DNA of 64,000 bases, from positions 310,001 through 374,000 of IMG/VR virus record IMGVR_UViG_3300032236_001850; one strand, written 5' to 3'. Positions within the stretch are counted from its first letter, which is position 1. Every line of letters starts with the position of its first letter. Positions 44,007 through 55,345 of this stretch are shown piece by piece. Below the pieces are notes generated by a model, which saw nothing but the letters and a program-made list of their open reading frames with translations, was not told where the DNA came from and did no database searches. Made by a program: the position numbers and the translations under genes.

Positions 44007-45548
44007 ATGCCGGTAACCAATATAAAATTTATAAATTATAGTGACGGTCAAAATCTAGCAATAGATAAAATAAACCACAATTTTGACGAAATTGTAGAAG
44101 CCCATGGTGGATCTGTTGGAGAAACTGGACCTAGTGGGGATAGAGGACCAATTGGAAGTAATGGTTTAATTGGACCGACTGGAAATGATGGTCCAAGGGG
44201 AACCAAATGGTTTGTGCAGGGAATTATGCCATCAACAACACCCGGAAATTCTGTGGTTTATGGAGATTATTGGGTTAATAATGGGGATAGTTTAATTTAT
44301 CAATTTGGTCCTACTGGATGGAATAGCACAGGATATAGTTTGTCGTCTTCCGGTAATATATTTAATGATGTTACCTCATATTTTACTAATGGAGGAACAG
44401 GAATTTCTGTTAAATTTGATCAGGTTTCACCCGAAAATTATACTTTTATAATTTCGGATAAATCTGCTCAGTCTGGAATAATTAACGAGAAGCTAGCAAA
44501 ATTCCTTATTTCCACAGATACCTCCGGAGATCCTTCGGCTCTTCTTGAATTCATGAAAAGTGATTTGATTTTAAGCAACGCTGGAGATTATGCATTACAT
44601 CCAACTTTCTCGTGGGCTACCAGTTTACCAACTGATAACTCGTTGAAGTTTGATGTTCCTGGTGGATCGTTATTAATAGGAGCATCCGGTGGATTTTCCT
44701 CGAATTCACAAAAAATTGATGTCTCTGCAGGTTCTGCTATAGATATAAATTACGGAGCAACTTCTGGATCTGGTATATCTGCAACTGGTGGAATCAATAT
44801 CATTTCATCAAATCCAACAAACGGTGTTTTTAATATACTAAGTGATAATTTAAGTATAACTGGTGGACATGCATCCTTTAAAAGTAGTGTAGAGTTAAAC
44901 GGAAGTCCAAGTGGTAATTCTCCATCAGTTGAACTCATCATTGGTGGGACATCAGGTTTAAGAACAAGAAGAACAGCAGATAATTTTAACACCATATCAA
45001 ACAGTGTATATAATGTTTCTCTTGAAACACAAGCTGATAAGGAATTCTACATAAACACAAAGGGTAAAATAAGAACTAAAAAACTTAAAACAGGTGTGAC
45101 TTATCAAAGTTATCAGAATTCAGCATTTAGTTCCGGTGGAACAAATTGGTATTTTATATCAAGACCTGGTGGTCCAGTTCAATCTACTGTTATTAAAAAT
45201 GGAAATACTGTTATAGTAACAATAAATGAACCTAACCCAATAGCAAATTTTGGTATTGGTTTGTATAGTGATCCGCTTTATTCTTTATGGGGTCCTGGAT
45301 CAATAGACAATGGACAAGCCATTGATATAAGTGTTTACTGTAGTCCAGATTTAAACCAAGGATCCAATACTCTTTTTAAATATATTGGTGTTGGTACAAC
45401 TGGTGGTGTGGTTCCCAAAGTAACTTTACCTACTCCAGCATCAGCTGTTGATTTTACTATTGTCAAGGGTGTAACTGGTAGTACCACAACAGTTTATTAT
45501 AAAGCTTATACTAGTGCTGGAGGATCTGGAGGATCTTTTACAGTTTGA
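44007..45548 (+). CDS. collagen-like tail fibre protein, paralogue 1
   Basis: KINHNFD, then 10 Gly-X-Y triplets (44109-44198), GTKW...GDYW. Confidence 0.7.
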   Translation: MPVTNIKFINYSDGQNLAIDKINHNFDEIVEAHGGSVGETGPSGDRGPIGSNGLIGPTGNDGPRGTKWFVQGIMPSTTPGNSVVYGDYWVNNGDSLIYQFGPTGWNSTGYSLSSSGNIFNDVTSYFTNGGTGISVKFDQVSPENYTFIISDKSAQSGIINEKLAKFLISTDTSGDPSALLEFMKSDLILSNAGDYALHPTFSWATSLPTDNSLKFDVPGGSLLIGASGGFSSNSQKIDVSAGSAIDINYGATSGSGISATGGINIISSNPTNGVFNILSDNLSITGGHASFKSSVELNGSPSGNSPSVELIIGGTSGLRTRRTADNFNTISNSVYNVSLETQADKEFYINTKGKIRTKKLKTGVTYQSYQNSAFSSGGTNWYFISRPGGPVQSTVIKNGNTVIVTINEPNPIANFGIGLYSDPLYSLWGPGSIDNGQAIDISVYCSPDLNQGSNTLFKYIGVGTTGGVVPKVTLPTPASAVDFTIVKGVTGSTTTVYYKAYTSAGGSGGSFTV

Positions 45549-45554
45549 TATATA
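45547..45554 (+). promoter_or_regulatory. GATATATA motif, putative late promoter
   Basis: Overlaps the TGA stop; 24 nt before ATG 45579. Confidence 0.5.
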
Positions 45555-45578
45555 GTCTAAGATAATTAAACTGTATAG

Positions 45579-47270
45579 ATGGCCCTTATAAAATTACTGA
45601 GAATAGAAGACGGAGATTCCCAAAAAAATCTAACTGACAAGTTAAATTATAACTTTAATAGATTAGTTACTTTTGGTGGTGGACCTTATGGGAGGATGGG
45701 TAAAAAAGGTCCCATTGGTCCAAAGGGACCAACCGGTCCTATTGGATCGCATGGAGATTCTGGTATAAGAGGAACAATCTGGACTGTTGGTGTTTGCCAG
45801 CCTTCCATTGCATCATCCATTGATGGTGATTATTGGCTTAATACTTATTCAGGTAATTTAGTTTATCAATTTTCTCAGAGCTCTGGCTGGAACTACTATG
45901 GATTCAATATAAAATCAACCGATTTATTTGATGTTTTTGGCCCACTTTCAACCTTAAGTGGTGTTAGTGCATATAGAGGATACTTTATAGCTTCACAAAC
46001 CCCTCTAAATTATACAGTTGTTATAAGTGATGCTGATCTTTCAAGCGGTGCAGGAGCAACTGCAGCAAATCTTTTTATTAATCCTCAGTATTCAAAATTT
46101 GTAATTGCGACTGATAGTAATAACACTTCGAAAAATTTATTGGAATTCAGTAAGGGTGACTACGCTGATGATGTGAGCTTCACTTCAAAAACACCAAAGA
46201 TTCTTTGGAATCCTGGTGCAACAGCTGACAGAGGTCCATATGGATTGTTATGGAATAATGACTATCTTAATATAAATGTCAGAAATTCCAGTTCTTCCAA
46301 TGGTTATTTTAATATAAAATCAAATACCGGTAATTTCTTAGTAAATTCTACCGGATTTAATTATTTTTCCAATGATCCCAACCAAATATCCAATCTTATC
46401 TCCTATGGAAATATAATTTTTGATTTAGGGTCGGGTAAAGTTCTTTTCTCTACTAAAAATATATCTTGGAACGTTGATAAATTTTATATAAATTCCTCGC
46501 TTGGTATATCAACTGGAGCATTAGAATCAGAATATGCTTTAGATCTTGTGTCCAGTGATTCTGGGTCTGGAAATCTTAGATATATTTACAATTCAAATGG
46601 TGTTAGAGATGCGGTGCTTATGAATTTCTATCAAAGTAGCCCATCATATTATCAATTATTTACTGTTACTGGTGATGGTGTAACATATGCTGATAAAACA
46701 GTAAGATCTGTACAAACACCGCAACAATTAACTCAAAGTGGAAGTAGTTCAACTTCCATAGGAACGGTTAATTGGGTTTCATTGGTTCCTTCGATAACAA
46801 ATACTGGATATATTAATGGCTGTTTTTATGTTAATAATGGTGCAGACCATATAATAGGAAAATCACCATCAGCATCGGCTGGTAATAGAGGGATATCAAT
46901 ATTTACACCAGCAACGGGTGGATATCTAAATAGCGAAAATGGTGGATGGCTAAATATCCTTGATAATTATGAAGCAATAAGCTTTACTGTAAGAAGCGAT
47001 AATCCAGGAGCAACTGGTAGTTGTTTTAAATACATAGGTCTAAATACAGATTATAATGAACAAACCTCACCTTCAACCCTACCTTCGCAATCGGATGTTA
47101 TTCTTGCTGGGTATGCAGCAAACATCGATATAACGATAATAAACATGACTGGATCTGGAGCAACGTTAAGTTCTAATAGATGGTTTAGAGTTTATTATTC
47201 TGCTTGGGGTGGAACTTTAAACACACCACAATGTGGTGTTATATCAACATATAATTCAATAGCAAATTAA
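45579..47270 (+). CDS. collagen-like tail fibre protein, paralogue 2
   Basis: KLNYNFN, then 10 Gly-X-Y triplets (45681-45770), GTIW...GDYW. Confidence 0.7.
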   Translation: MALIKLLRIEDGDSQKNLTDKLNYNFNRLVTFGGGPYGRMGKKGPIGPKGPTGPIGSHGDSGIRGTIWTVGVCQPSIASSIDGDYWLNTYSGNLVYQFSQSSGWNYYGFNIKSTDLFDVFGPLSTLSGVSAYRGYFIASQTPLNYTVVISDADLSSGAGATAANLFINPQYSKFVIATDSNNTSKNLLEFSKGDYADDVSFTSKTPKILWNPGATADRGPYGLLWNNDYLNINVRNSSSSNGYFNIKSNTGNFLVNSTGFNYFSNDPNQISNLISYGNIIFDLGSGKVLFSTKNISWNVDKFYINSSLGISTGALESEYALDLVSSDSGSGNLRYIYNSNGVRDAVLMNFYQSSPSYYQLFTVTGDGVTYADKTVRSVQTPQQLTQSGSSSTSIGTVNWVSLVPSITNTGYINGCFYVNNGADHIIGKSPSASAGNRGISIFTPATGGYLNSENGGWLNILDNYEAISFTVRSDNPGATGSCFKYIGLNTDYNEQTSPSTLPSQSDVILAGYAANIDITIINMTGSGATLSSNRWFRVYYSAWGGTLNTPQCGVISTYNSIAN

Positions 47271-47278
47271 TAAGGAAG

Positions 47279-50200
47279 ATGCATTTTAATACTAAATACA
47301 TATTTAAGGGTGATACCGAAAAAGAAATAATTGGAAAAATCAATTATAATTTTGATCAAATACTTTCATTTGCAATAGGTCCCGATGGTCATCCTGGTCC
47401 AAGAGGAGCAACAGGTATCTTTGGACCTGCTGGTAAAAGAGGTCCGAGTGGGAGCCCTGGAATTAGAGCATCGAAATGGTATAAGCAACCGACGGAACCT
47501 TCCGATGCACCAAATACTAATGATGTTTGGATAGACAATTCGGTTTCTGATGGAAATATAAAGATATTTAATTATCCTATAACAAATTACCAATGGCAGA
47601 ACAGCGGATATTCTTTTTTGAATTCCAAATATTTCCAATCCTATTCATATATCCAAGGACCTGGTGGTGCTACTGATAAATATGTGATAGGTTTTAAATA
47701 TCCTGGCGGTATAACAGGTTCAGCTAATACCTCTCTTTTAATAAGTGATTTCAATCTTAATTCTGTAAAATCAAATCCTAATAATTCCAAGGTTGTCGTA
47801 TCCACACAAGATCAAATTGATAGGCCCATTATGACTTTTTCTAAAAATGGTGCTATCTCCGATGATGTTCCATCATTCTATTGGAACTCGACAGGTAATA
47901 ATGCTGGATTGAAGTTTGATATTGGCGGTGCTTTTAGTGTAACAACAAATAATGATTTTTCTATAGACAGCGGACTTGCTAGAACCCTTATTACATCCAA
48001 TCTTTCAACATTTAGAAACAATCAGGGTGCATTCAATGTTCACGGTGATGGTGATTTTTTATTTGCTAGTAACATTGGTTTAGGTGTTGGCGGATTTTTA
48101 AGTATAACTACAAAAAATTTACAGGTTGATAATTCTTCTGTAAATCATTATGGCGGTGTAACTATAACATCACCTCTGACATCGACCTATATACTTAATT
48201 CGAAACCGAGTTCCCCGTCATATCTGAATGGAATATCTGCTAATATAAAAACGTCTGCTGTTATAAGAACCTTTGAATTTGAAGATTATACTGGGAATGC
48301 CATTATGTACGGTAAACCATCTGGATCTGTTTCTAGTGGAAATCTTGCACAGACCGTGTTTGGCACTAGCGGTGGTTTTACTGGTGGAACTGGAGGACCT
48401 TTTTCTTACCATGTTAGAAAGGTGAAAGAGGTTAGACAATCAACAACTGGATTAAGTGCTAGACAATATCTAACAACCACAACAAACAATCTAACCGATG
48501 TATTGGATATGTCAACTAATACTATATGGGAAAATGACATAATTCTTGCAACACCTACCGCATACAGTAGCGTTTCTAGTTCAAATTTAGGAAGTTTTAA
48601 AGTTGGTGACATAGATTCAAGCTTTAATTATTCATCGGGCTTAGACATTTTTGGGTCAGGATTTAAAAATTCTTTAACTGGAACCGGTGTTTATGATGCT
48701 GTTGTTAATGATGTTTTTAGATTAACAGATGGAAGCGGAAGCACAATATTTGCTGGAAATTTTAAATATTATAATGATCAGCCAGTGAAAACGGGATCTT
48801 TAACTAATGTATTAGGTCTGGTTAAAGTCAATTCTGATGGTACGATGGATACAACATTCAGAGCCAACATTTCTGCAATTTCTTTAGTTTCTGTTACCTC
48901 CATTAATGGTGCTGTAGTTGATGAGTCTGGTGGTCCTTACGGAAGTGGTCTTATTTATATTTATGGTTGCTTTACTCATACTACAAACAAAAATGGGATA
49001 TTGTGTTTAAATTTGGACGGAACACTATATAGTACGTTCAATTCAAATATGGGTATTGGAATAAATTCTGGTTCCTCTATATTCAAAGCTGGTATCGATC
49101 CAACAGGTACTAATTTATTTGCTGTTGGTGATTTTACTTATTATAAAACAACAACAACTTTTAGAAATAAGTTAATGAAGATAAAAATAAATGGAGCATC
49201 GGATGGATTACTTAATACATCATTTTTAAGTGGATCGACTTCGGTGGGACCTGGATTCGTTGGTTCAAGCAATATTCCCTACTGTTTTGATTTTTTGCCA
49301 AGTGGTAATATAATTGTTGGAGGATCCTTTAATTCCTTCAATTCATCAACGAGCGGTTCACCATTTACTATTAATTCTGTCATTGAATTGAATAGCAGCA
49401 ACGGTTTAAGAGTAACCACTGGAGGATTTGCTAATATAATTTATTCTACATTTATAGCATCTGATCCTATTGTTTCATCTATTAAATATAATAGTTATAA
49501 TTCCTATATCTATATAGGTGGAAGTTTTTCCAAAATAAATGGGACAGATTACGGAAGAATAGCAAGATTTACCATAACCGGAACAACTTTTACCCTCGAT
49601 TCAACTTTATCCTCAACTACAGGATTTAATGATATTGTTTATGATTTTGCTTTTGATGGTAGTAAAGTTTACGTTGGCGGAAGATTTACTTCTTATAGAG
49701 GAACATTATGTCCCGCTTTTGTTAAAATAAATAATAATGGATCAATAGATCCTACCGCTTCGATATATCACAACATTGTTAGTCCTAAATCAATTCAGCC
49801 AACATTTGAATGGACTGTTGGATTGGTTAAAAAAATGTACCTTAGTATAGTTGATAATGAATTCATGTATGTTGGTGGTTTTTTAAATAGTGTATTTTCA
49901 GCATCAGCTTCGAATAACGGAATTTATATCAAGGTACCATCATCCATAACACAAGATTATTTACCTGTTTATACCGATGGTACTACTACTAATTATAGAG
50001 TATTTCTTAATGATCCAGGCAATGATGCAAAGTTACACTATATAAAGGGATTGGTATTTGATGCTGGTTTACCGAATGCTGTGACGTCATATGTTGATTT
50101 TTCACAGGGTGCTACTGGTTGTCAATATGTGGATCTCATGTGGGTTTCTAAAACAAGTACAGCAAATATTGCTAATCCTAGACTTTTTTATAAAAACTGC

Positions 50201-51133
50201 GAGGGTTTTAGCGGTTATGTTGACTTTGGTTCTAATGGTGTTTATTCTACCGCACCTGCATCATCAAATGGTGGACAGAATGTAAGTGTTACCTGGGAAT
50301 TTAGTAGACAACAAACTGGATCGTGTAACATTTATAAAAATGGAACATCAATTTCAAATCTTCTTATAAATAAAACAACTTCAGGAAATGGTTCTTTACC
50401 ATACTCCATAGGAGATAAAATATATTCTAACGTTTCCGCTGGTGGTGCTAGCTCCGGTTATATCGGTGCCTATGCATCATTAAGAATAACGAAAACTTCA
50501 TTAAGTACTGGTATAACAACAACTGAATTCACACAAAGCATTACTGCAGATGTTGGTACTGTTAATAATTTCTCCAATCCTGTTACGTTAGTTGCTGGAT
50601 ATTCTTATTATATAGAATGTGTTGCACAATCTACACCAACAGGTGGAGGTTGTTGTTTTGTTGGTGATACTCTTGTAACCATGTATAATGGAAGTTTAAA
50701 AAATATTTCTAGTGTAATAGCTGGTGATCTTATATTAACATATAATGTTGAAACGGATCAATATGGAAAAGGTACTGTAACGTCAATAGAGTCACCTATA
50801 AAGGACGATATTATAGAATTCATACTATCCAATGGAAATTCAATAAAAGCCACAACTGAGCATCCATTTTGGGTTATAGGAAAGGGTTGGAGCTCTTATA
50901 GTCCTGACAGAACGATGTTTGATCATCAAATGGAAGTTTCTAAATTGTCCATTGGTGATGTACTATTGGACGAAAGTGGAAATGAAATTGAATTATTATT
51001 TATGAATAATGATGCTCAAGATCTTCAAAGAGTTTATAATATTCTTATGGAAGATGGAGATCACACTTATTATGCAAATGGGATATTGGTTCATAACAAG
51101 CTTCAGTATAACGATGGAAATGGTTTAGTATAG
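47279..51133 (+). CDS. collagen-like tail fibre protein, paralogue 3, with delta-60-like beta-propeller repeats and a C-terminal Hint domain
   Basis: KINYNFD, then 10 Gly-X-Y triplets (47378-47467); repeats such as VKVNSDGTMDTTF, IIVGGSFNSFN, VYVGGRFTSY; Hint blocks at the C-terminus. Confidence 0.75.
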   Translation: MHFNTKYIFKGDTEKEIIGKINYNFDQILSFAIGPDGHPGPRGATGIFGPAGKRGPSGSPGIRASKWYKQPTEPSDAPNTNDVWIDNSVSDGNIKIFNYPITNYQWQNSGYSFLNSKYFQSYSYIQGPGGATDKYVIGFKYPGGITGSANTSLLISDFNLNSVKSNPNNSKVVVSTQDQIDRPIMTFSKNGAISDDVPSFYWNSTGNNAGLKFDIGGAFSVTTNNDFSIDSGLARTLITSNLSTFRNNQGAFNVHGDGDFLFASNIGLGVGGFLSITTKNLQVDNSSVNHYGGVTITSPLTSTYILNSKPSSPSYLNGISANIKTSAVIRTFEFEDYTGNAIMYGKPSGSVSSGNLAQTVFGTSGGFTGGTGGPFSYHVRKVKEVRQSTTGLSARQYLTTTTNNLTDVLDMSTNTIWENDIILATPTAYSSVSSSNLGSFKVGDIDSSFNYSSGLDIFGSGFKNSLTGTGVYDAVVNDVFRLTDGSGSTIFAGNFKYYNDQPVKTGSLTNVLGLVKVNSDGTMDTTFRANISAISLVSVTSINGAVVDESGGPYGSGLIYIYGCFTHTTNKNGILCLNLDGTLYSTFNSNMGIGINSGSSIFKAGIDPTGTNLFAVGDFTYYKTTTTFRNKLMKIKINGASDGLLNTSFLSGSTSVGPGFVGSSNIPYCFDFLPSGNIIVGGSFNSFNSSTSGSPFTINSVIELNSSNGLRVTTGGFANIIYSTFIASDPIVSSIKYNSYNSYIYIGGSFSKINGTDYGRIARFTITGTTFTLDSTLSSTTGFNDIVYDFAFDGSKVYVGGRFTSYRGTLCPAFVKINNNGSIDPTASIYHNIVSPKSIQPTFEWTVGLVKKMYLSIVDNEFMYVGGFLNSVFSASASNNGIYIKVPSSITQDYLPVYTDGTTTNYRVFLNDPGNDAKLHYIKGLVFDAGLPNAVTSYVDFSQGATGCQYVDLMWVSKTSTANIANPRLFYKNCEGFSGYVDFGSNGVYSTAPASSNGGQNVSVTWEFSRQQTGSCNIYKNGTSISNLLINKTTSGNGSLPYSIGDKIYSNVSAGGASSGYIGAYASLRITKTSLSTGITTTEFTQSITADVGTVNNFSNPVTLVAGYSYYIECVAQSTPTGGGCCFVGDTLVTMYNGSLKNISSVIAGDLILTYNVETDQYGKGTVTSIESPIKDDIIEFILSNGNSIKATTEHPFWVIGKGWSSYSPDRTMFDHQMEVSKLSIGDVLLDESGNEIELLFMNNDAQDLQRVYNILMEDGDHTYYANGILVHNKLQYNDGNGLV
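50654..51097 (+). other. Hint (intein-like/BIL) autoprocessing domain, 148 aa, no endonuclease
   Basis: Block A CFVGDTLV, block B ATTEHPFW, blocks F/G RVYNI...HTYYANGILVHN; the +1 residue is Lys. Confidence 0.9.
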
Positions 51134-51161
51134 AAACTAAATATCATCAAATAAAAAATGT

Positions 51162-51169
51162 GATATATA
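51162..51169 (+). promoter_or_regulatory. GATATATA motif, putative late promoter
   Basis: Intergenic, 15 nt before ATG 51185. Confidence 0.55.
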
Positions 51170-51184
51170 ATAAAATTATAAAGT

Positions 51185-51430
51185 ATGAAAGATTTAACAG
51201 ATCAAGAAAAAGAAAGATTGCTTAGATTATCTAAAAAGTTTATTAAGGTCCACCAGGACATTTTTAAAATAGAGGAATCTATTAAAATTATGCAAGAGAG
51301 ATCATGTAAACTGATTGGAGATCTTGAGAAATGTAGAGATGCAGAAAAAGATTTCATAAAGGATCTATCTCAAAAATATGGTAATGGAACTTTAGATCCA
51401 CTTACGCTAACCTGGAAAAAAGAAATATAG
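51185..51430 (+). CDS. small coiled-coil protein
   Basis: 81 aa, heptad pattern, ends KYGNGTLDPLTLTW. Confidence 0.7.
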   Translation: MKDLTDQEKERLLRLSKKFIKVHQDIFKIEESIKIMQERSCKLIGDLEKCRDAEKDFIKDLSQKYGNGTLDPLTLTWKKEI

Positions 51431-51943
51431 ATGGCAACTCCTAAAAAAGAAACAGTTAAGAAACAGACACCCAAGAAAAGAGCTCCAAGAAAAGCGACTG
51501 TTGTTGAATCAGTAGAGACAAAGTTAACACCCAAATTTGACATCAAAACGATAGTTATAATTGTACTTCTTGTTTTTAGTTTGATTTTTGGTTTAATGTG
51601 GTTCTTTGGTGGAAACGATGCTTCCAAGGAAAGAGTAAAACAACTTGAAAGTGAATTTAAAAAGCTTGAAGAAGATAAAGCTGCAGCTGATGCTAAAATT
51701 GCAGATTGGCAAAACAAGTATAATGACGCAGATAAAAAGGACAAGGAGCTAGAAACTGAGGTTGTCAAATTGAAATCAGATTCCAAGATAGCACAGGAAA
51801 AGGCTAAAAAATCAAAGGAAGATCTTGATAAAGTTCAAGGCGGGATAACTGAAAATAGAAAGGAAATAGAAAATCTTAAAAATAATCCACCTACATTGAG
51901 CGACGAGCAACTTTTAGAAGCTTTAATCAAAAAAATGAATTAA
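51431..51943 (+). CDS. membrane-anchored coiled-coil protein (i-spanin-like topology)
   Basis: Basic N-terminus, one TM helix (IVIIVLLVFSLIFGLMWFF), long charged coiled coil. Confidence 0.55.
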   Translation: MATPKKETVKKQTPKKRAPRKATVVESVETKLTPKFDIKTIVIIVLLVFSLIFGLMWFFGGNDASKERVKQLESEFKKLEEDKAAADAKIADWQNKYNDADKKDKELETEVVKLKSDSKIAQEKAKKSKEDLDKVQGGITENRKEIENLKNNPPTLSDEQLLEALIKKMN

Positions 51944-54796: not shown

Positions 54797-55345
54797 ATGT
54801 TATTAAACCCAAAAGGTAATAGTTTTTATTTTGTATTTCCTAAAGGATTTTTCCCTCCTAAAGTTGTTGATAAATATTTGCCTTATATCAAAAAACAACC
54901 TGTGCCCTTTGATAATATTAGTGATTACATGAATAGCACAATTCAGACTATAGGGTTTCCTAATATGACGATAGATTCAGTGGAACAGATTAGAAATCTC
55001 GGTAAGAAAATATCATACAAGAGTTCAACGAACGTTCAAGATTTATTCTCCCACGATTTTAGTATTGGATTTAAGAATGTCGATGGGTTTATAAACTATT
55101 TCATCATGCTCGATACCATATTACATTTTTTAAATTTTGAAAATCCGGAGTTGAGATTACCAAATTTGCCATTAAGAATAATGGACAATGAAGGAAATAT
55201 AGTAACATCCGTAACGTTCAAAGAGGTAATATTAACATCATATTCGGAATTGCAATTGAGTTATTCAGCTAATGCAAATCAATTCACACCATTTACTTTA
55301 GGTTTCAAATGTAACTACCTTGATATAGTTCTAGAAGCAAAGTAG
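54797..55345 (+). CDS. tail-tube-fold protein, T4 gp3-like tail completion protein
   Basis: 182 aa; IQTIGFPNMTI...FINYFIM...LRIMDNEGN..VTFKEV...L.Y...FTLGF fits the gp3/gp19 fold; lies near uvsY/uvsW as in other T4-like phages. Confidence 0.55.
   Translation: MLLNPKGNSFYFVFPKGFFPPKVVDKYLPYIKKQPVPFDNISDYMNSTIQTIGFPNMTIDSVEQIRNLGKKISYKSSTNVQDLFSHDFSIGFKNVDGFINYFIMLDTILHFLNFENPELRLPNLPLRIMDNEGNIVTSVTFKEVILTSYSELQLSYSANANQFTPFTLGFKCNYLDIVLEAK

What the first reader, a model, noticed from the sequence alone, without database searches (positions are those of the whole stretch)
50630..51133. C-terminal Hint domain on a tail fibre: self-cleavage or ligation rather than splicing
Seen: ...PTGGGC|CFVGDT...TTEHPF...VHN|KLQYNDGNGLV-stop. 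Cys1, the block B TxxH and the terminal HN are intact, but the +1 residue is Lys (not Cys/Ser/Thr), the C-extein is only 11 aa and there is no homing endonuclease. Knowledge: bacterial intein-like and Hedgehog Hint domains form an N-terminal thioester that can be hydrolysed or attacked by an external nucleophile. Inference: a domesticated maturation device that releases itself or covalently couples the fibre C-terminus (GGGC) to another molecule.
Basis: partly seen in the sequence, partly recalled or inferred. Interest (0 to 1): 0.62.

Follow-up and report, generated by a model that had tools for sequence, protein, structure and literature searches.

The report
Self-cleaving Hint domain ending phage fibre
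The far end of a putative tail-fibre protein of a 434-kb freshwater jumbo phage carries an intact, endonuclease-free bacterial-intein-like (Hint) domain that most likely cuts itself off after folding; this is a known kind of domain in a place where it has not been described, and related phages have lost or swapped it several times.

Summary
ORF 47279-51133 (1284 aa) ends in a 148-aa Hint domain (Cys1126 to Asn1273), followed by Lys1274 and a further 10 residues. Pfam PT-HINT scores above its threshold. The AlphaFold model matches the bacterial-intein-like (BIL) domains 6TMM (Z 24.2) and 2LWY (Z 20.9).

It fits a type-A BIL domain, not a mobile intein. Cys1, TxxH and His-Asn are 95-100% conserved in 439 related copies. 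The +1 Lys is a family signature (K 67%, R 12%), not decay. Most relatives also sit at or near a C-terminus.

Among syntenic fibre orthologues, 11 carry the Hint and 7 lack it, needing at least 3 changes on the tree. One Hint-less allele keeps a decayed Hint 3' remnant behind its stop codon. One lineage has a swapped Hint. Where present, the Hint is under purifying selection (dN/dS 0.09-0.22). Hint-less fibres end 8-17 residues past the junction.

Best reading: a dispensable self-removing C-terminal module. A thioester forms at Cys1125-Cys1126 and the Hint leaves. Ligation to Lys, as shown for the closest solved relative (Tetrahymena BIL2), is not excluded. The chemistry is inferred, not shown.

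The parts
47279..51133 (+). Putative tail-fibre / receptor-binding protein gene (1284 aa, P0001), carrier of the Hint domain
   Evidence: ORF list and translation. PHROG tail-fibre hit through the collagen-like N-terminus. It is the third of three paralogues that share about 230-260 N-terminal residues. A tail-tube gene (phrog_45) lies at 54797-55345. The same synteny is seen in related jumbo-phage contigs.
47378..47461 (+). Short collagen-like Gly-X-Y repeat (residues 34-61) inside the N-terminal region shared with the two upstream paralogues
   Evidence: Pfam Collagen hit below threshold, residues 34-61. BLASTP to ORFs 44007-45548 and 45579-47270 gives E 1e-16.
48584..49903 (+). DUF5122 / delta-60-repeat beta-propeller region (about residues 436-875); absent from the syntenic 838-aa orthologue P0016
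   Evidence: Pfam DUF5122 58 bits. Similar to Flavobacterium and Hymenobacter T9SS proteins. The P0001/P0016 alignment skips residues 436-875.
50276..50641 (+). Distal Ig-like beta-sandwich domain (about residues 1000-1121). Its last part (50466-50676) is hyper-divergent between otherwise similar pond strains
   Evidence: AlphaFold model residues 41-161 are all-beta, with only weak matches (Z about 7) to Gram-positive pilin domains. Contigs from pond metagenomes show a 'same length, diverged' block at 50466-50676.
50642..50653 (+). Gly-rich linker and -1 residue (G1122-G1123-G1124-C1125); predicted C-terminus of the mature fibre
   Evidence: Sequence. The linker is conserved in orthologues, and Hint-less orthologues stop 8-17 residues after this point.
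50654..51097 (+). Type-A BIL-like Hint domain, 148 aa (Cys1126 to Asn1273). Block A is C1126-F1127, block B is T1192..H1195, block G is H1272-N1273
   Evidence: Conservation in 439 related copies: C1 1.00, T1192 0.95, H1195 1.00, D1227 0.90, H1272 0.96, N1273 0.98. dN/dS is 0.09-0.22.
51098..51133 (+). +1 Lys1274, the 10 following non-conserved residues, and the stop codon
   Evidence: The +1 residue is K in 296 and R in 53 of 439 copies. Orthologue tails are 6-16 aa and variable beyond +1/+2.
44007..47270 (+). Two upstream paralogous fibre-like genes (513 and 563 aa) without a Hint domain
   Evidence: The own-genome search finds only one copy of this Hint.

Best explanation
Residues 1126-1273 form a catalytically intact, endonuclease-free Hint domain of the bacterial-intein-like type A kind. 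It is fused through a GGG linker to the distal end of a putative tail fibre of a 434.5-kb freshwater jumbo phage, whose host is probably in the Bacteroidota. The most likely course is as follows. After folding, Cys1126 attacks the carbonyl of Cys1125 (N-to-S acyl shift). The thioester is resolved mainly by water or a small thiol. The roughly 18-kDa Hint (159 aa with its tail) then leaves, and the mature fibre ends at ...PTGGGC1125. Asn1273 probably cyclises as well and clips off the 11-aa tail. The module is an accessory. Selection keeps it working where it is present, as expected for any element that must remove itself so as not to spoil the fibre tip. The fibre works without it, and it is repeatedly lost or exchanged by recombination. 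Shown here: the fold, the catalytic residues, their conservation, the distribution, the losses and the selection. Inferred: the chemistry, and that the Hint is absent from virions.
For: Identity of the domain:
- Pfam PT-HINT scores above its cut-off.
- The best solved relatives are BIL domains: 6tmm Z 24.2 and 2lwy Z 20.9, ahead of all inteins and of Hedgehog.
- It has the type-A BIL features (Cys1, His-Asn, no +1 nucleophile) as defined in PMC4031507. For these domains cleavage products dominate.

Catalytic residues and selection:
- The catalytic residues are 95-100% conserved in 439 copies from 254 proteins.
- Hint dN/dS is 0.09-0.22, as low as in the fibre's own domains.

C-terminal architecture:
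- 62% of relatives end within 30 aa after the His-Asn (138 of 222).
- The same holds for 53 of 73 ORFs in cellular genomes, many of them Flavobacteriia.

Dispensability and turnover:
- Seven full-length orthologues in the same synteny lack the Hint and stop 8-17 residues after the junction, so they look like the predicted cleaved product.
- One of them (L011) keeps a frameshifted remnant of the Hint 3' end behind its stop. The remnant is 49/65 nt identical to L003, and tblastn to the Hint C-terminus gives E 0.004.
- The tree needs at least 3 gain/loss changes.
- The Hint allele was replaced in P0012: N-terminal dS 0.32 versus Hint dS 1.49 against P0004.
- No neighbouring gene co-varies with Hint presence.

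Recurrence:
- A second, unrelated phage has a C-terminal Hint on a long protein just after gp25-like baseplate genes.
Against: No biochemical or proteomic data exist. No RNA run or proteome was available. The strong conservation of His-Asn and of a basic +1 residue holds even in 51 proteins that end at or one residue after the Asn. This is not explained by simple N-terminal hydrolysis and hints at a coupled C-terminal or amine-dependent step. The closest solved relative, BIL2, ligates to lysine rather than merely cleaving. Purifying selection cannot tell a useful maturation device from a harmless self-removing passenger. That the protein is a tail fibre rests on context and weak profile hits only.
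Confidence: 0.55

Rival explanations
1. Amine-resolved splicing onto the tail. The thioester at Cys1125 is attacked either by the epsilon-amine of the conserved Lys1274, or by its alpha-amine after Asn1273 cyclises. The Hint then excises itself and the fibre ends in ...GGGC joined to the 11-residue tail by an isopeptide or peptide bond. This would be a C-terminal 'intein' that leaves a small scar.
For: The +1 residue is Lys in 67% of 439 copies. Only 1 of 222 proteins ends at the Asn itself, while 51 end at or one residue after it. Asn is 98% conserved. Type-A BILs are proposed to splice through attack of the freed amine (PMC4031507). BIL2, the best structural match, yields a Lys epsilon-NH2 isopeptide (PMC8616854).
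Against: Arg replaces Lys in 12% of copies and other residues in about 20%. That fits an electrostatic or structural role better than a nucleophile. One orthologue (P0010) has His-His in place of His-Asn. The tail is variable and has no evident use. For type-A BILs cleavage dominates over splicing.
Confidence: 0.2
2. Intermolecular covalent coupling. The thioester is captured by an amine or hydroxyl of another molecule, such as a neighbouring fibre subunit, another virion protein or a host-surface component. This would cross-link the fibre tip or make adsorption covalent.
For: Hint thioesters are transferred to outside nucleophiles in Hedgehog (cholesterol) and in BIL2, which conjugates ubl4 to other proteins. 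The site is the distal, strain-variable tip of the fibre.
Against: There is no extra domain after the Hint to recruit a nucleophile, only a variable 11-aa tail. Hint-less orthologues in the same synteny evidently function. No residue in the fibre body co-varies with Hint presence except Tyr1061, and no Lys does. No neighbouring gene co-varies either. A thioester would have to survive from assembly until host contact.
Confidence: 0.1
3. A non-processing module. The Hint stays on the fibre as a structural or binding domain, as the related AXH domain does in ataxin-1, or it is simply inert.
For: Pfam AXH is the best-scoring model, and AXH is a non-catalytic binding domain. Tandem arrays of 2-8 copies in relatives could be read as repeats of a binding unit.
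Against: Near-total conservation of exactly the catalytic set (Cys1, Thr and His of block B, His-Asn) across 439 copies. AXH lacks these residues and covers only the first two thirds of the domain.
Confidence: 0.08
4. A canonical mobile intein, or a pretoxin Hint that releases a C-terminal effector.
For: The distribution among orthologues is patchy. Pfam PT-HINT is above threshold. Some Flavobacteriia carriers have RHS repeats upstream.
Against: There is no +1 Cys/Ser/Thr, no endonuclease, and no C-extein domain, only 11 variable residues. The insertion is not inside a conserved site. Every orthologue tail is 6-16 aa, so there is no toxin to release.
Confidence: 0.03

Closest known systems
Type-A bacterial intein-like (BIL) domains, e.g. 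Clostridium thermocellum BIL (PDB 2LWY)
   Same: Hint fold (Z 20.9, rmsd 1.6 A over 135 residues, 31% identity). Shares Cys1, block B TxxH and C-terminal His-Asn, and has no +1 Cys/Ser/Thr and no endonuclease. Sits in a variable region of a non-conserved extracellular protein. Expected to cleave more than splice.
   Different: The carrier is a phage virion protein rather than a bacterial secreted protein. The domain is at the extreme C-terminus with only a short tail. The +1 Lys/Arg is conserved across the subfamily. No activity has been measured.
BIL2 of the Tetrahymena thermophila BUBL1 polyubiquitin-like locus (PDB 6TMM, 6Y75)
   Same: Best structural match (Z 24.2, rmsd 1.9 A over 153 residues; Foldseek E 5e-13). 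Sequence match E 9e-10. Same Cys1 and His-Asn set.
   Different: BIL2 lies between two ubiquitin-like domains and transfers the upstream one to lysines as an isopeptide. Here the upstream cargo is a fibre and there is no downstream domain.
Pretoxin Hint (PT-HINT, PF07591) of polymorphic toxin systems
   Same: Pfam score above the gathering cut-off. Sits in large surface or delivery proteins and marks a recombination-prone module boundary. Some cellular relatives follow RHS repeats.
   Different: No toxin domain follows, and the tail is 11 variable residues.
Hedgehog C-terminal autoprocessing (Hog) domain
   Same: The overall layout, a cargo followed by a C-terminal Hint whose thioester frees the cargo. 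Fold match to 1AT0 at Z 17.1.
   Different: No sterol-recognition region follows the Hint. His-Asn is present here but not in Hog. Sequence identity is only 14%.
Peptidase S74 intramolecular chaperone domains of phage tail fibres, tailspikes and endosialidases
   Same: A C-terminal module on phage fibres that removes itself after assembly (PMC7824862; PMC12143355). This is the closest functional analogue.
   Different: Unrelated fold and chemistry: a Ser-Lys dyad in a triple-beta-helix context versus a Cys thioester in a Hint fold. There is no S74 hit in P0001. A chaperone role for the Hint is not shown.
Mini-inteins of phage genes (e.g. gp41-1, DnaB)
   Same: Fold (Z 19.4-19.5), similar size, and Cys1 with His-Asn.
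   Different: No +1 nucleophile and no second extein. Not inserted in a conserved site of an essential enzyme.

Membership tests
Type-A BIL domain | Hint (Hedgehog/intein) fold | tested here: met
   AlphaFold model pLDDT 87. Z 24.2 to 6tmm and 20.9 to 2lwy.
Type-A BIL domain | N-terminal Cys (or Ser) nucleophile and block B Thr-x-x-His | tested here: met
   C1126, T1192 and H1195. They are 100%, 95% and 100% conserved in 439 copies.
Type-A BIL domain | C-terminal His-Asn as in inteins | tested here: met
   H1272-N1273. HN is present in 417 of 439 copies. Definition taken from PMC4031507.
Type-A BIL domain | No nucleophilic +1 residue | tested here: met
   +1 is Lys1274. In the family, C, S and T together account for 24 of 439 copies.
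Type-A BIL domain | Located in variable regions of non-conserved, usually extracellular proteins, with a patchy distribution | tested here: met
   It sits at the distal end of a fibre whose neighbouring 210 bases are hyper-divergent. Presence varies, 11 with and 7 without.
Type-A BIL domain | Autocatalytic N- and/or C-terminal cleavage | not testable with these tools
   Needs expression and mass spectrometry.
Canonical (class 1) intein | +1 Cys/Ser/Thr and a functional C-extein that is re-ligated | tested here: not met
   +1 is Lys, with an 11-aa variable tail.
Canonical (class 1) intein | Insertion in a conserved site of a conserved host protein, often with a homing endonuclease | tested here: not met
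   The position is terminal. The 148-aa domain has no insert.
Pretoxin Hint (PT-HINT) of polymorphic toxins | Profile match above Pfam's gathering score | tested here: met
   31.4 bits against a 27.7 cut-off.
Pretoxin Hint (PT-HINT) of polymorphic toxins | Followed by a C-terminal toxin domain (with an immunity gene) | tested here: not met
   Only 11 residues follow. The downstream 81-aa gene is present in Hint-plus and Hint-less loci alike.
Hedgehog Hog domain | Sterol-recognition region after the Hint; no terminal His-Asn | tested here: not met
   No region follows the Hint, and His-Asn is present.
Peptidase S74 intramolecular chaperone | S74 profile / Ser-Lys dyad domain at the fibre C-terminus | tested here: not met
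   No such Pfam hit in P0001. The C-terminus is a Hint fold.

The most novel reading that the evidence does not exclude
This Hint belongs to a very large, undescribed 'His-Asn-Lys' subfamily (8414 representative clusters) found in phages, giant-virus-like contigs, Flavobacteriia, CPR bacteria and DPANN archaea. In this reading the conserved +1 lysine, or an outside amine, resolves the thioester. The domain would then be a lysine-directed ligase or splicing module, as shown for Tetrahymena BIL2. On a tail fibre it would either cap the tip with an isopeptide-linked tail or bond the fibre covalently to a partner such as another virion protein or the host surface.
Probability: 0.2. Interest if true: 0.8.

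Novelty: new member of a known kind. Interest (0 to 1): 0.5.

Why it matters
Phage fibres are known to shed C-terminal S74 chaperone domains. A Hint/BIL domain in the same position would be a second, chemically different self-removing end-module. It appears here in at least two unrelated phage lineages. My full-text searches found no report linking Hint domains to tail fibres.

The family-wide conservation of His-Asn-Lys is of interest to intein biochemists. Many proteins stop right after that lysine, and the closest solved relative makes lysine isopeptides. Together these give a directly testable question: is lysine the acceptor? A small, endonuclease-free Hint that works at a C-terminus could also be a useful protein-engineering part.

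The paired Hint-plus and Hint-less alleles in the same synteny are a natural experiment on whether such modules are useful or merely tolerated.

Tried and rejected
Other copies and phage records:
- A search of the phage's own 434.5-kb record for other copies of this Hint found only the one.
- tblastn against 50,697 deposited phage records found only 15 weak hits: helicase inteins in Vibrio phages, and an internal intein-like insert in a Ruminococcus phage hypothetical protein. These have a different architecture.

Cargo and neighbour annotation:
- Pfam and PHROG scans of the cargo parts of ten other carriers, and of the neighbouring large window proteins, gave nothing useful.
- PDB sequence searches with the fibre body and with the 769-aa downstream protein found nothing. 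'Sheath' for the latter is therefore not claimed.

Possible further remnants:
- The tails of four Hint-less orthologues (motif F-x-A-D-N-I-L) resemble block G of the Hint. However, 6-8% of shuffles score as well, so this is not significant.

Population variants:
- Contigs from four pond and viral metagenome runs were laid on 49400-51700 to look for deletion variants of the Hint. None was seen, only a diverged block upstream. These are contigs, so rare variants would be missed.

Acceptor residue:
- A search for a residue in the fibre body that co-varies with Hint presence found only Tyr1061 and no lysine.

Missing data:
- DNA for P0002 and P0257 could not be fetched. The closest pair could therefore not be used for dN/dS.
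- The Dassa 2004 paper on BIL splicing is not held. Its content is cited through reviews.

Other checks:
- The in-frame position of the downstream 81-aa ORF is coincidental. Stops intervene, and the frame differs in L012 and L013.
Full report
**1. The observation**

The window is bases 310001-374000 of a 434,509-base IMG/VR virus record with direct terminal repeats. GC content is 34%.

ORF 47279-51133 (+) encodes a 1284-aa protein, P0001.
- The junction reads ...PTGGGC|CFVGDT.
- Cys1 is residue 1126 (codon 50654-50656).
- Block B is T1192..H1195.
- H1272-N1273 precede Lys1274.
- The tail is 11 residues, and the stop lies at 51131-51133.

From Cys1 to Asn is 148 residues, so there is no endonuclease insert.

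The match is not chance:
- Pfam PT-HINT scores 31.4 bits (cut-off 27.7) and AXH 49.9 bits (cut-off 33). The intein and Hedgehog Hint models score below their cut-offs.
- Sequence search of the PDB finds ataxin-1 AXH (E 2e-10), BIL2 of Tetrahymena (6tmm/6y75, E 9e-10) and the C. thermocellum BIL domain 2lwy (E 1e-8).
- An AlphaFold2 model of residues 960-1284, built on 98 aligned relatives, has mean pLDDT 87.
- The Hint part of the model superposes on 6tmm (Z 24.2, rmsd 1.9 A, 153 residues) and 2lwy (Z 20.9). These rank ahead of mini-inteins (Z about 19) and Hedgehog 1at0 (Z 17.1).

**2. The carrier**

P0001 has these parts:
- An N-terminal region with a short collagen-like repeat.
- A DUF5122 (delta-60) beta-propeller (about residues 436-875).
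- A distal Ig-like sandwich (about residues 1000-1121).
- A GGG linker, then the Hint.

The two genes just upstream (513 and 563 aa) share the first 230-260 residues with it and differ thereafter. That is the usual look of paralogous fibres. PHROG hits to tail-fibre families are weak and run through the collagen repeat. A tail-tube gene (phrog_45, E 9e-10) lies 3.7 kb downstream. The propeller resembles T9SS surface proteins of Flavobacterium and Hymenobacter. The phage occurs in pond and viral-fraction metagenomes. 'Tail fibre' is therefore probable but not proven.

**3. The family**

An exhaustive search with residues 1100-1284 found 8414 representative clusters at E <= 0.001, and 1643 at E <= 1e-10.

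In 439 full-length copies from 254 proteins:
- Cys1 is present in 438, and His-Asn in 417.
- Block B Thr is 95% conserved and His 100%.
- The +1 residue is Lys in 296 and Arg in 53.

Copies often stand in tandem (2-8 per protein), separated by only 1-6 residues, for example HN|KGG|CF.

After the last copy, 51 of 222 proteins end at or one residue after the Asn. Another 87 end within 30 residues.

A scan of one genome per prokaryotic species found the same motif in Flavobacteriia (Aquimarina, Dokdonia, Tenacibaculum, Flavobacterium), Bacteroidales, CPR bacteria and DPANN and other archaea. In 53 of 73 ORFs with a stop, the Hint again lay within 30 residues of the C-terminus. That scan used a pattern containing the Lys, so it says nothing about +1 frequency. 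Some of the Flavobacteriia carriers have RHS repeats upstream.

A different phage (157-kb contig) has a 1382-aa protein with this Hint at its end, directly after gp25-like baseplate genes.

**4. Distribution among orthologues**

A search with the fibre body (residues 60-1110) found full-length orthologues both with the Hint (11) and without it (7, plus fragments). All sit in the same gene order in related jumbo-phage contigs.

- The Hint-less proteins stop 8-17 residues after the position of the junction.
- A maximum-likelihood tree of the body needs at least 3 gains or losses, forced by starred branches.
- One loss is caught in the act. In L011 (P0255) the reading frame stops shortly after the GGGG linker. 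The non-coding DNA behind the stop still carries the 3' end of a Hint. It reads TNVILVYNKRIYSFGP followed by the old stop. It is 49/65 nt identical to the Hint of L003, with a 4-nt deletion.
- A second assembly (P0256) has the same kind of end.
- In P0012 and P0014 the Hint is a different allele. It is 37-46% identical to the others, while the body is 84-88% identical to P0004 and P0006. Against P0004, dS is 1.49 in the Hint versus 0.32 in the N-terminal region. This indicates replacement by recombination.
- A syntenic 838-aa orthologue lacks the propeller but keeps the Hint.
- Where present, the Hint has dN/dS 0.09-0.22 (main allele). This is similar to or lower than the adjacent distal domain.
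- No neighbouring gene and no lysine in the fibre co-vary with the Hint.

**5. How it most likely works**

By the published definition, type-A BILs have Cys1 and C-terminal His-Asn but lack the +1 nucleophile. They give mostly cleavage products. They can splice when the amine freed by Asn cyclisation attacks the thioester (PMC4031507; PMC7664689; PMC7765530). Every sequence and fold feature of that definition is met here. Activity cannot be tested with these tools.

The most economical outcome is self-removal. A thioester forms between Cys1125 and Cys1126, it is hydrolysed, and the roughly 18-kDa Hint is released. This leaves a fibre that ends where the natural Hint-less fibres end.

I put this at 0.55. 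The main reason for not going higher is the conserved His-Asn-Lys, even in proteins that stop at the Lys. Plain N-terminal hydrolysis does not explain it.

BIL2, the closest solved relative, produces a Lys epsilon-amine isopeptide and conjugates its upstream domain to other proteins (PMC8616854). So ligation to Lys1274 (0.2) or to an outside amine (0.1) stays open. The 12% Arg at +1 argues for an electrostatic rather than a nucleophilic role.

Whether the module benefits the phage or is a tolerated self-removing passenger cannot be decided from sequence. A benefit could be a transient cap or folding aid, like the S74 chaperones. Purifying selection is expected in both cases. The repeated losses, the allele swap and the tandem arrays lean towards 'dispensable'.

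**6. Known or new**

The domain is a new member of a known kind (type-A BIL / PT-HINT-like Hint). Three things seem not to be described, as far as full-text searches of the held library show: its position as the terminal module of phage fibres, the conserved +1 Lys/Arg, and the size of the terminal 'His-Asn-Lys' subfamily. Subscription papers were not searched.

**7. Limits**

- There is no expression, proteomic or biochemical evidence.
- Model coordinates could not be inspected.
- The 254-protein sample was chosen by similarity to the query.
- dS values near or above 1 are saturated, so dN/dS is approximate.

Noticed in passing
window 50654-51016 (P0001 residues 1126-1246): The AXH domain of human ataxin-1 and HBP1 matches the first two thirds of this Hint subfamily significantly. 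phmmer gives E 2e-10, with a shared motif around H-P-F-W-V..K-G-W-S-S..P..T. Pfam AXH is the top-scoring model for most family members, at up to 146 bits. A full-text search found no paper that mentions both 'AXH domain' and 'intein'. This suggests AXH descends from a Hint of this kind that lost its catalytic ends.
   Followed up: partly
proteins P0108, P0109, P0110, P0112, P0011 and others: Relatives carry 2-8 tandem Hint copies separated by only 1-6 residues (for example HN|KGG|CF), often filling the whole C-terminal half of the protein. What a string of self-cleaving domains would achieve is unexplained.
   Followed up: partly
L011 6388-6500: A Hint-less fibre allele keeps a frameshifted, stop-ridden remnant of the Hint 3' end and its old stop codon. 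The intergenic gap is 157 nt, against about 45-50 nt in other loci.
   Followed up: yes
window 50466-50676: In pond-metagenome contigs that are otherwise about 95% identical, this 210-base block is replaced by a diverged block of the same length. It covers the end of the distal sandwich domain and the linker just before the Hint. This looks like a receptor-binding hot spot or a recombination boundary.
   Followed up: partly
window 44007-45548, 45579-47270, 47279-51133: Three consecutive paralogous fibre-like genes share a 230-260-residue N-terminal region with a K-I-N-x-N-F motif and a short collagen-like repeat. Only the third carries a propeller and the Hint.
   Followed up: partly
L008 8001-10517 (P0016): A related 314-kb phage contig has, at the same position, an 838-aa fibre that lacks the whole DUF5122 propeller (residues 436-875 of P0001) but keeps the distal domain and the Hint.
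   Followed up: yes
L024, L041 (Aquimarina, Psychroserpens) and other Flavobacteriia loci L018-L039: Long chromosomal proteins of Flavobacteriia, some with RHS repeats, end in this Hint plus 4-12 residues and have no toxin domain behind it. This is the same terminal layout as in the phage fibre, in the likely host phylum.
   Followed up: partly
L009 8001-10298 (P0034): A 765-aa protein with two terminal Hint copies lies on a 326-kb contig. Its neighbours include 2OG-Fe(II) oxygenases, SET-like and Pox_C4_C10-like genes, a radical SAM enzyme and glycosyltransferases. This looks like a giant virus or another very large phage.
   Followed up: no
window 51185-51430: An 81-aa ORF directly downstream lies in the same frame as the fibre gene, separated by stops. 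It is conserved (79-88 aa) in Hint-plus and Hint-less loci alike. Its function is unknown, and the shared frame is not conserved in relatives.
   Followed up: partly
window 50459-50461 (Tyr1061): This is the only fibre-body position that tracks Hint presence. It is Tyr in 10 of 11 Hint-bearing orthologues, and Phe, Ser or Ala in all 7 Hint-less ones. With three loss lineages this may be phylogenetic noise.
   Followed up: no
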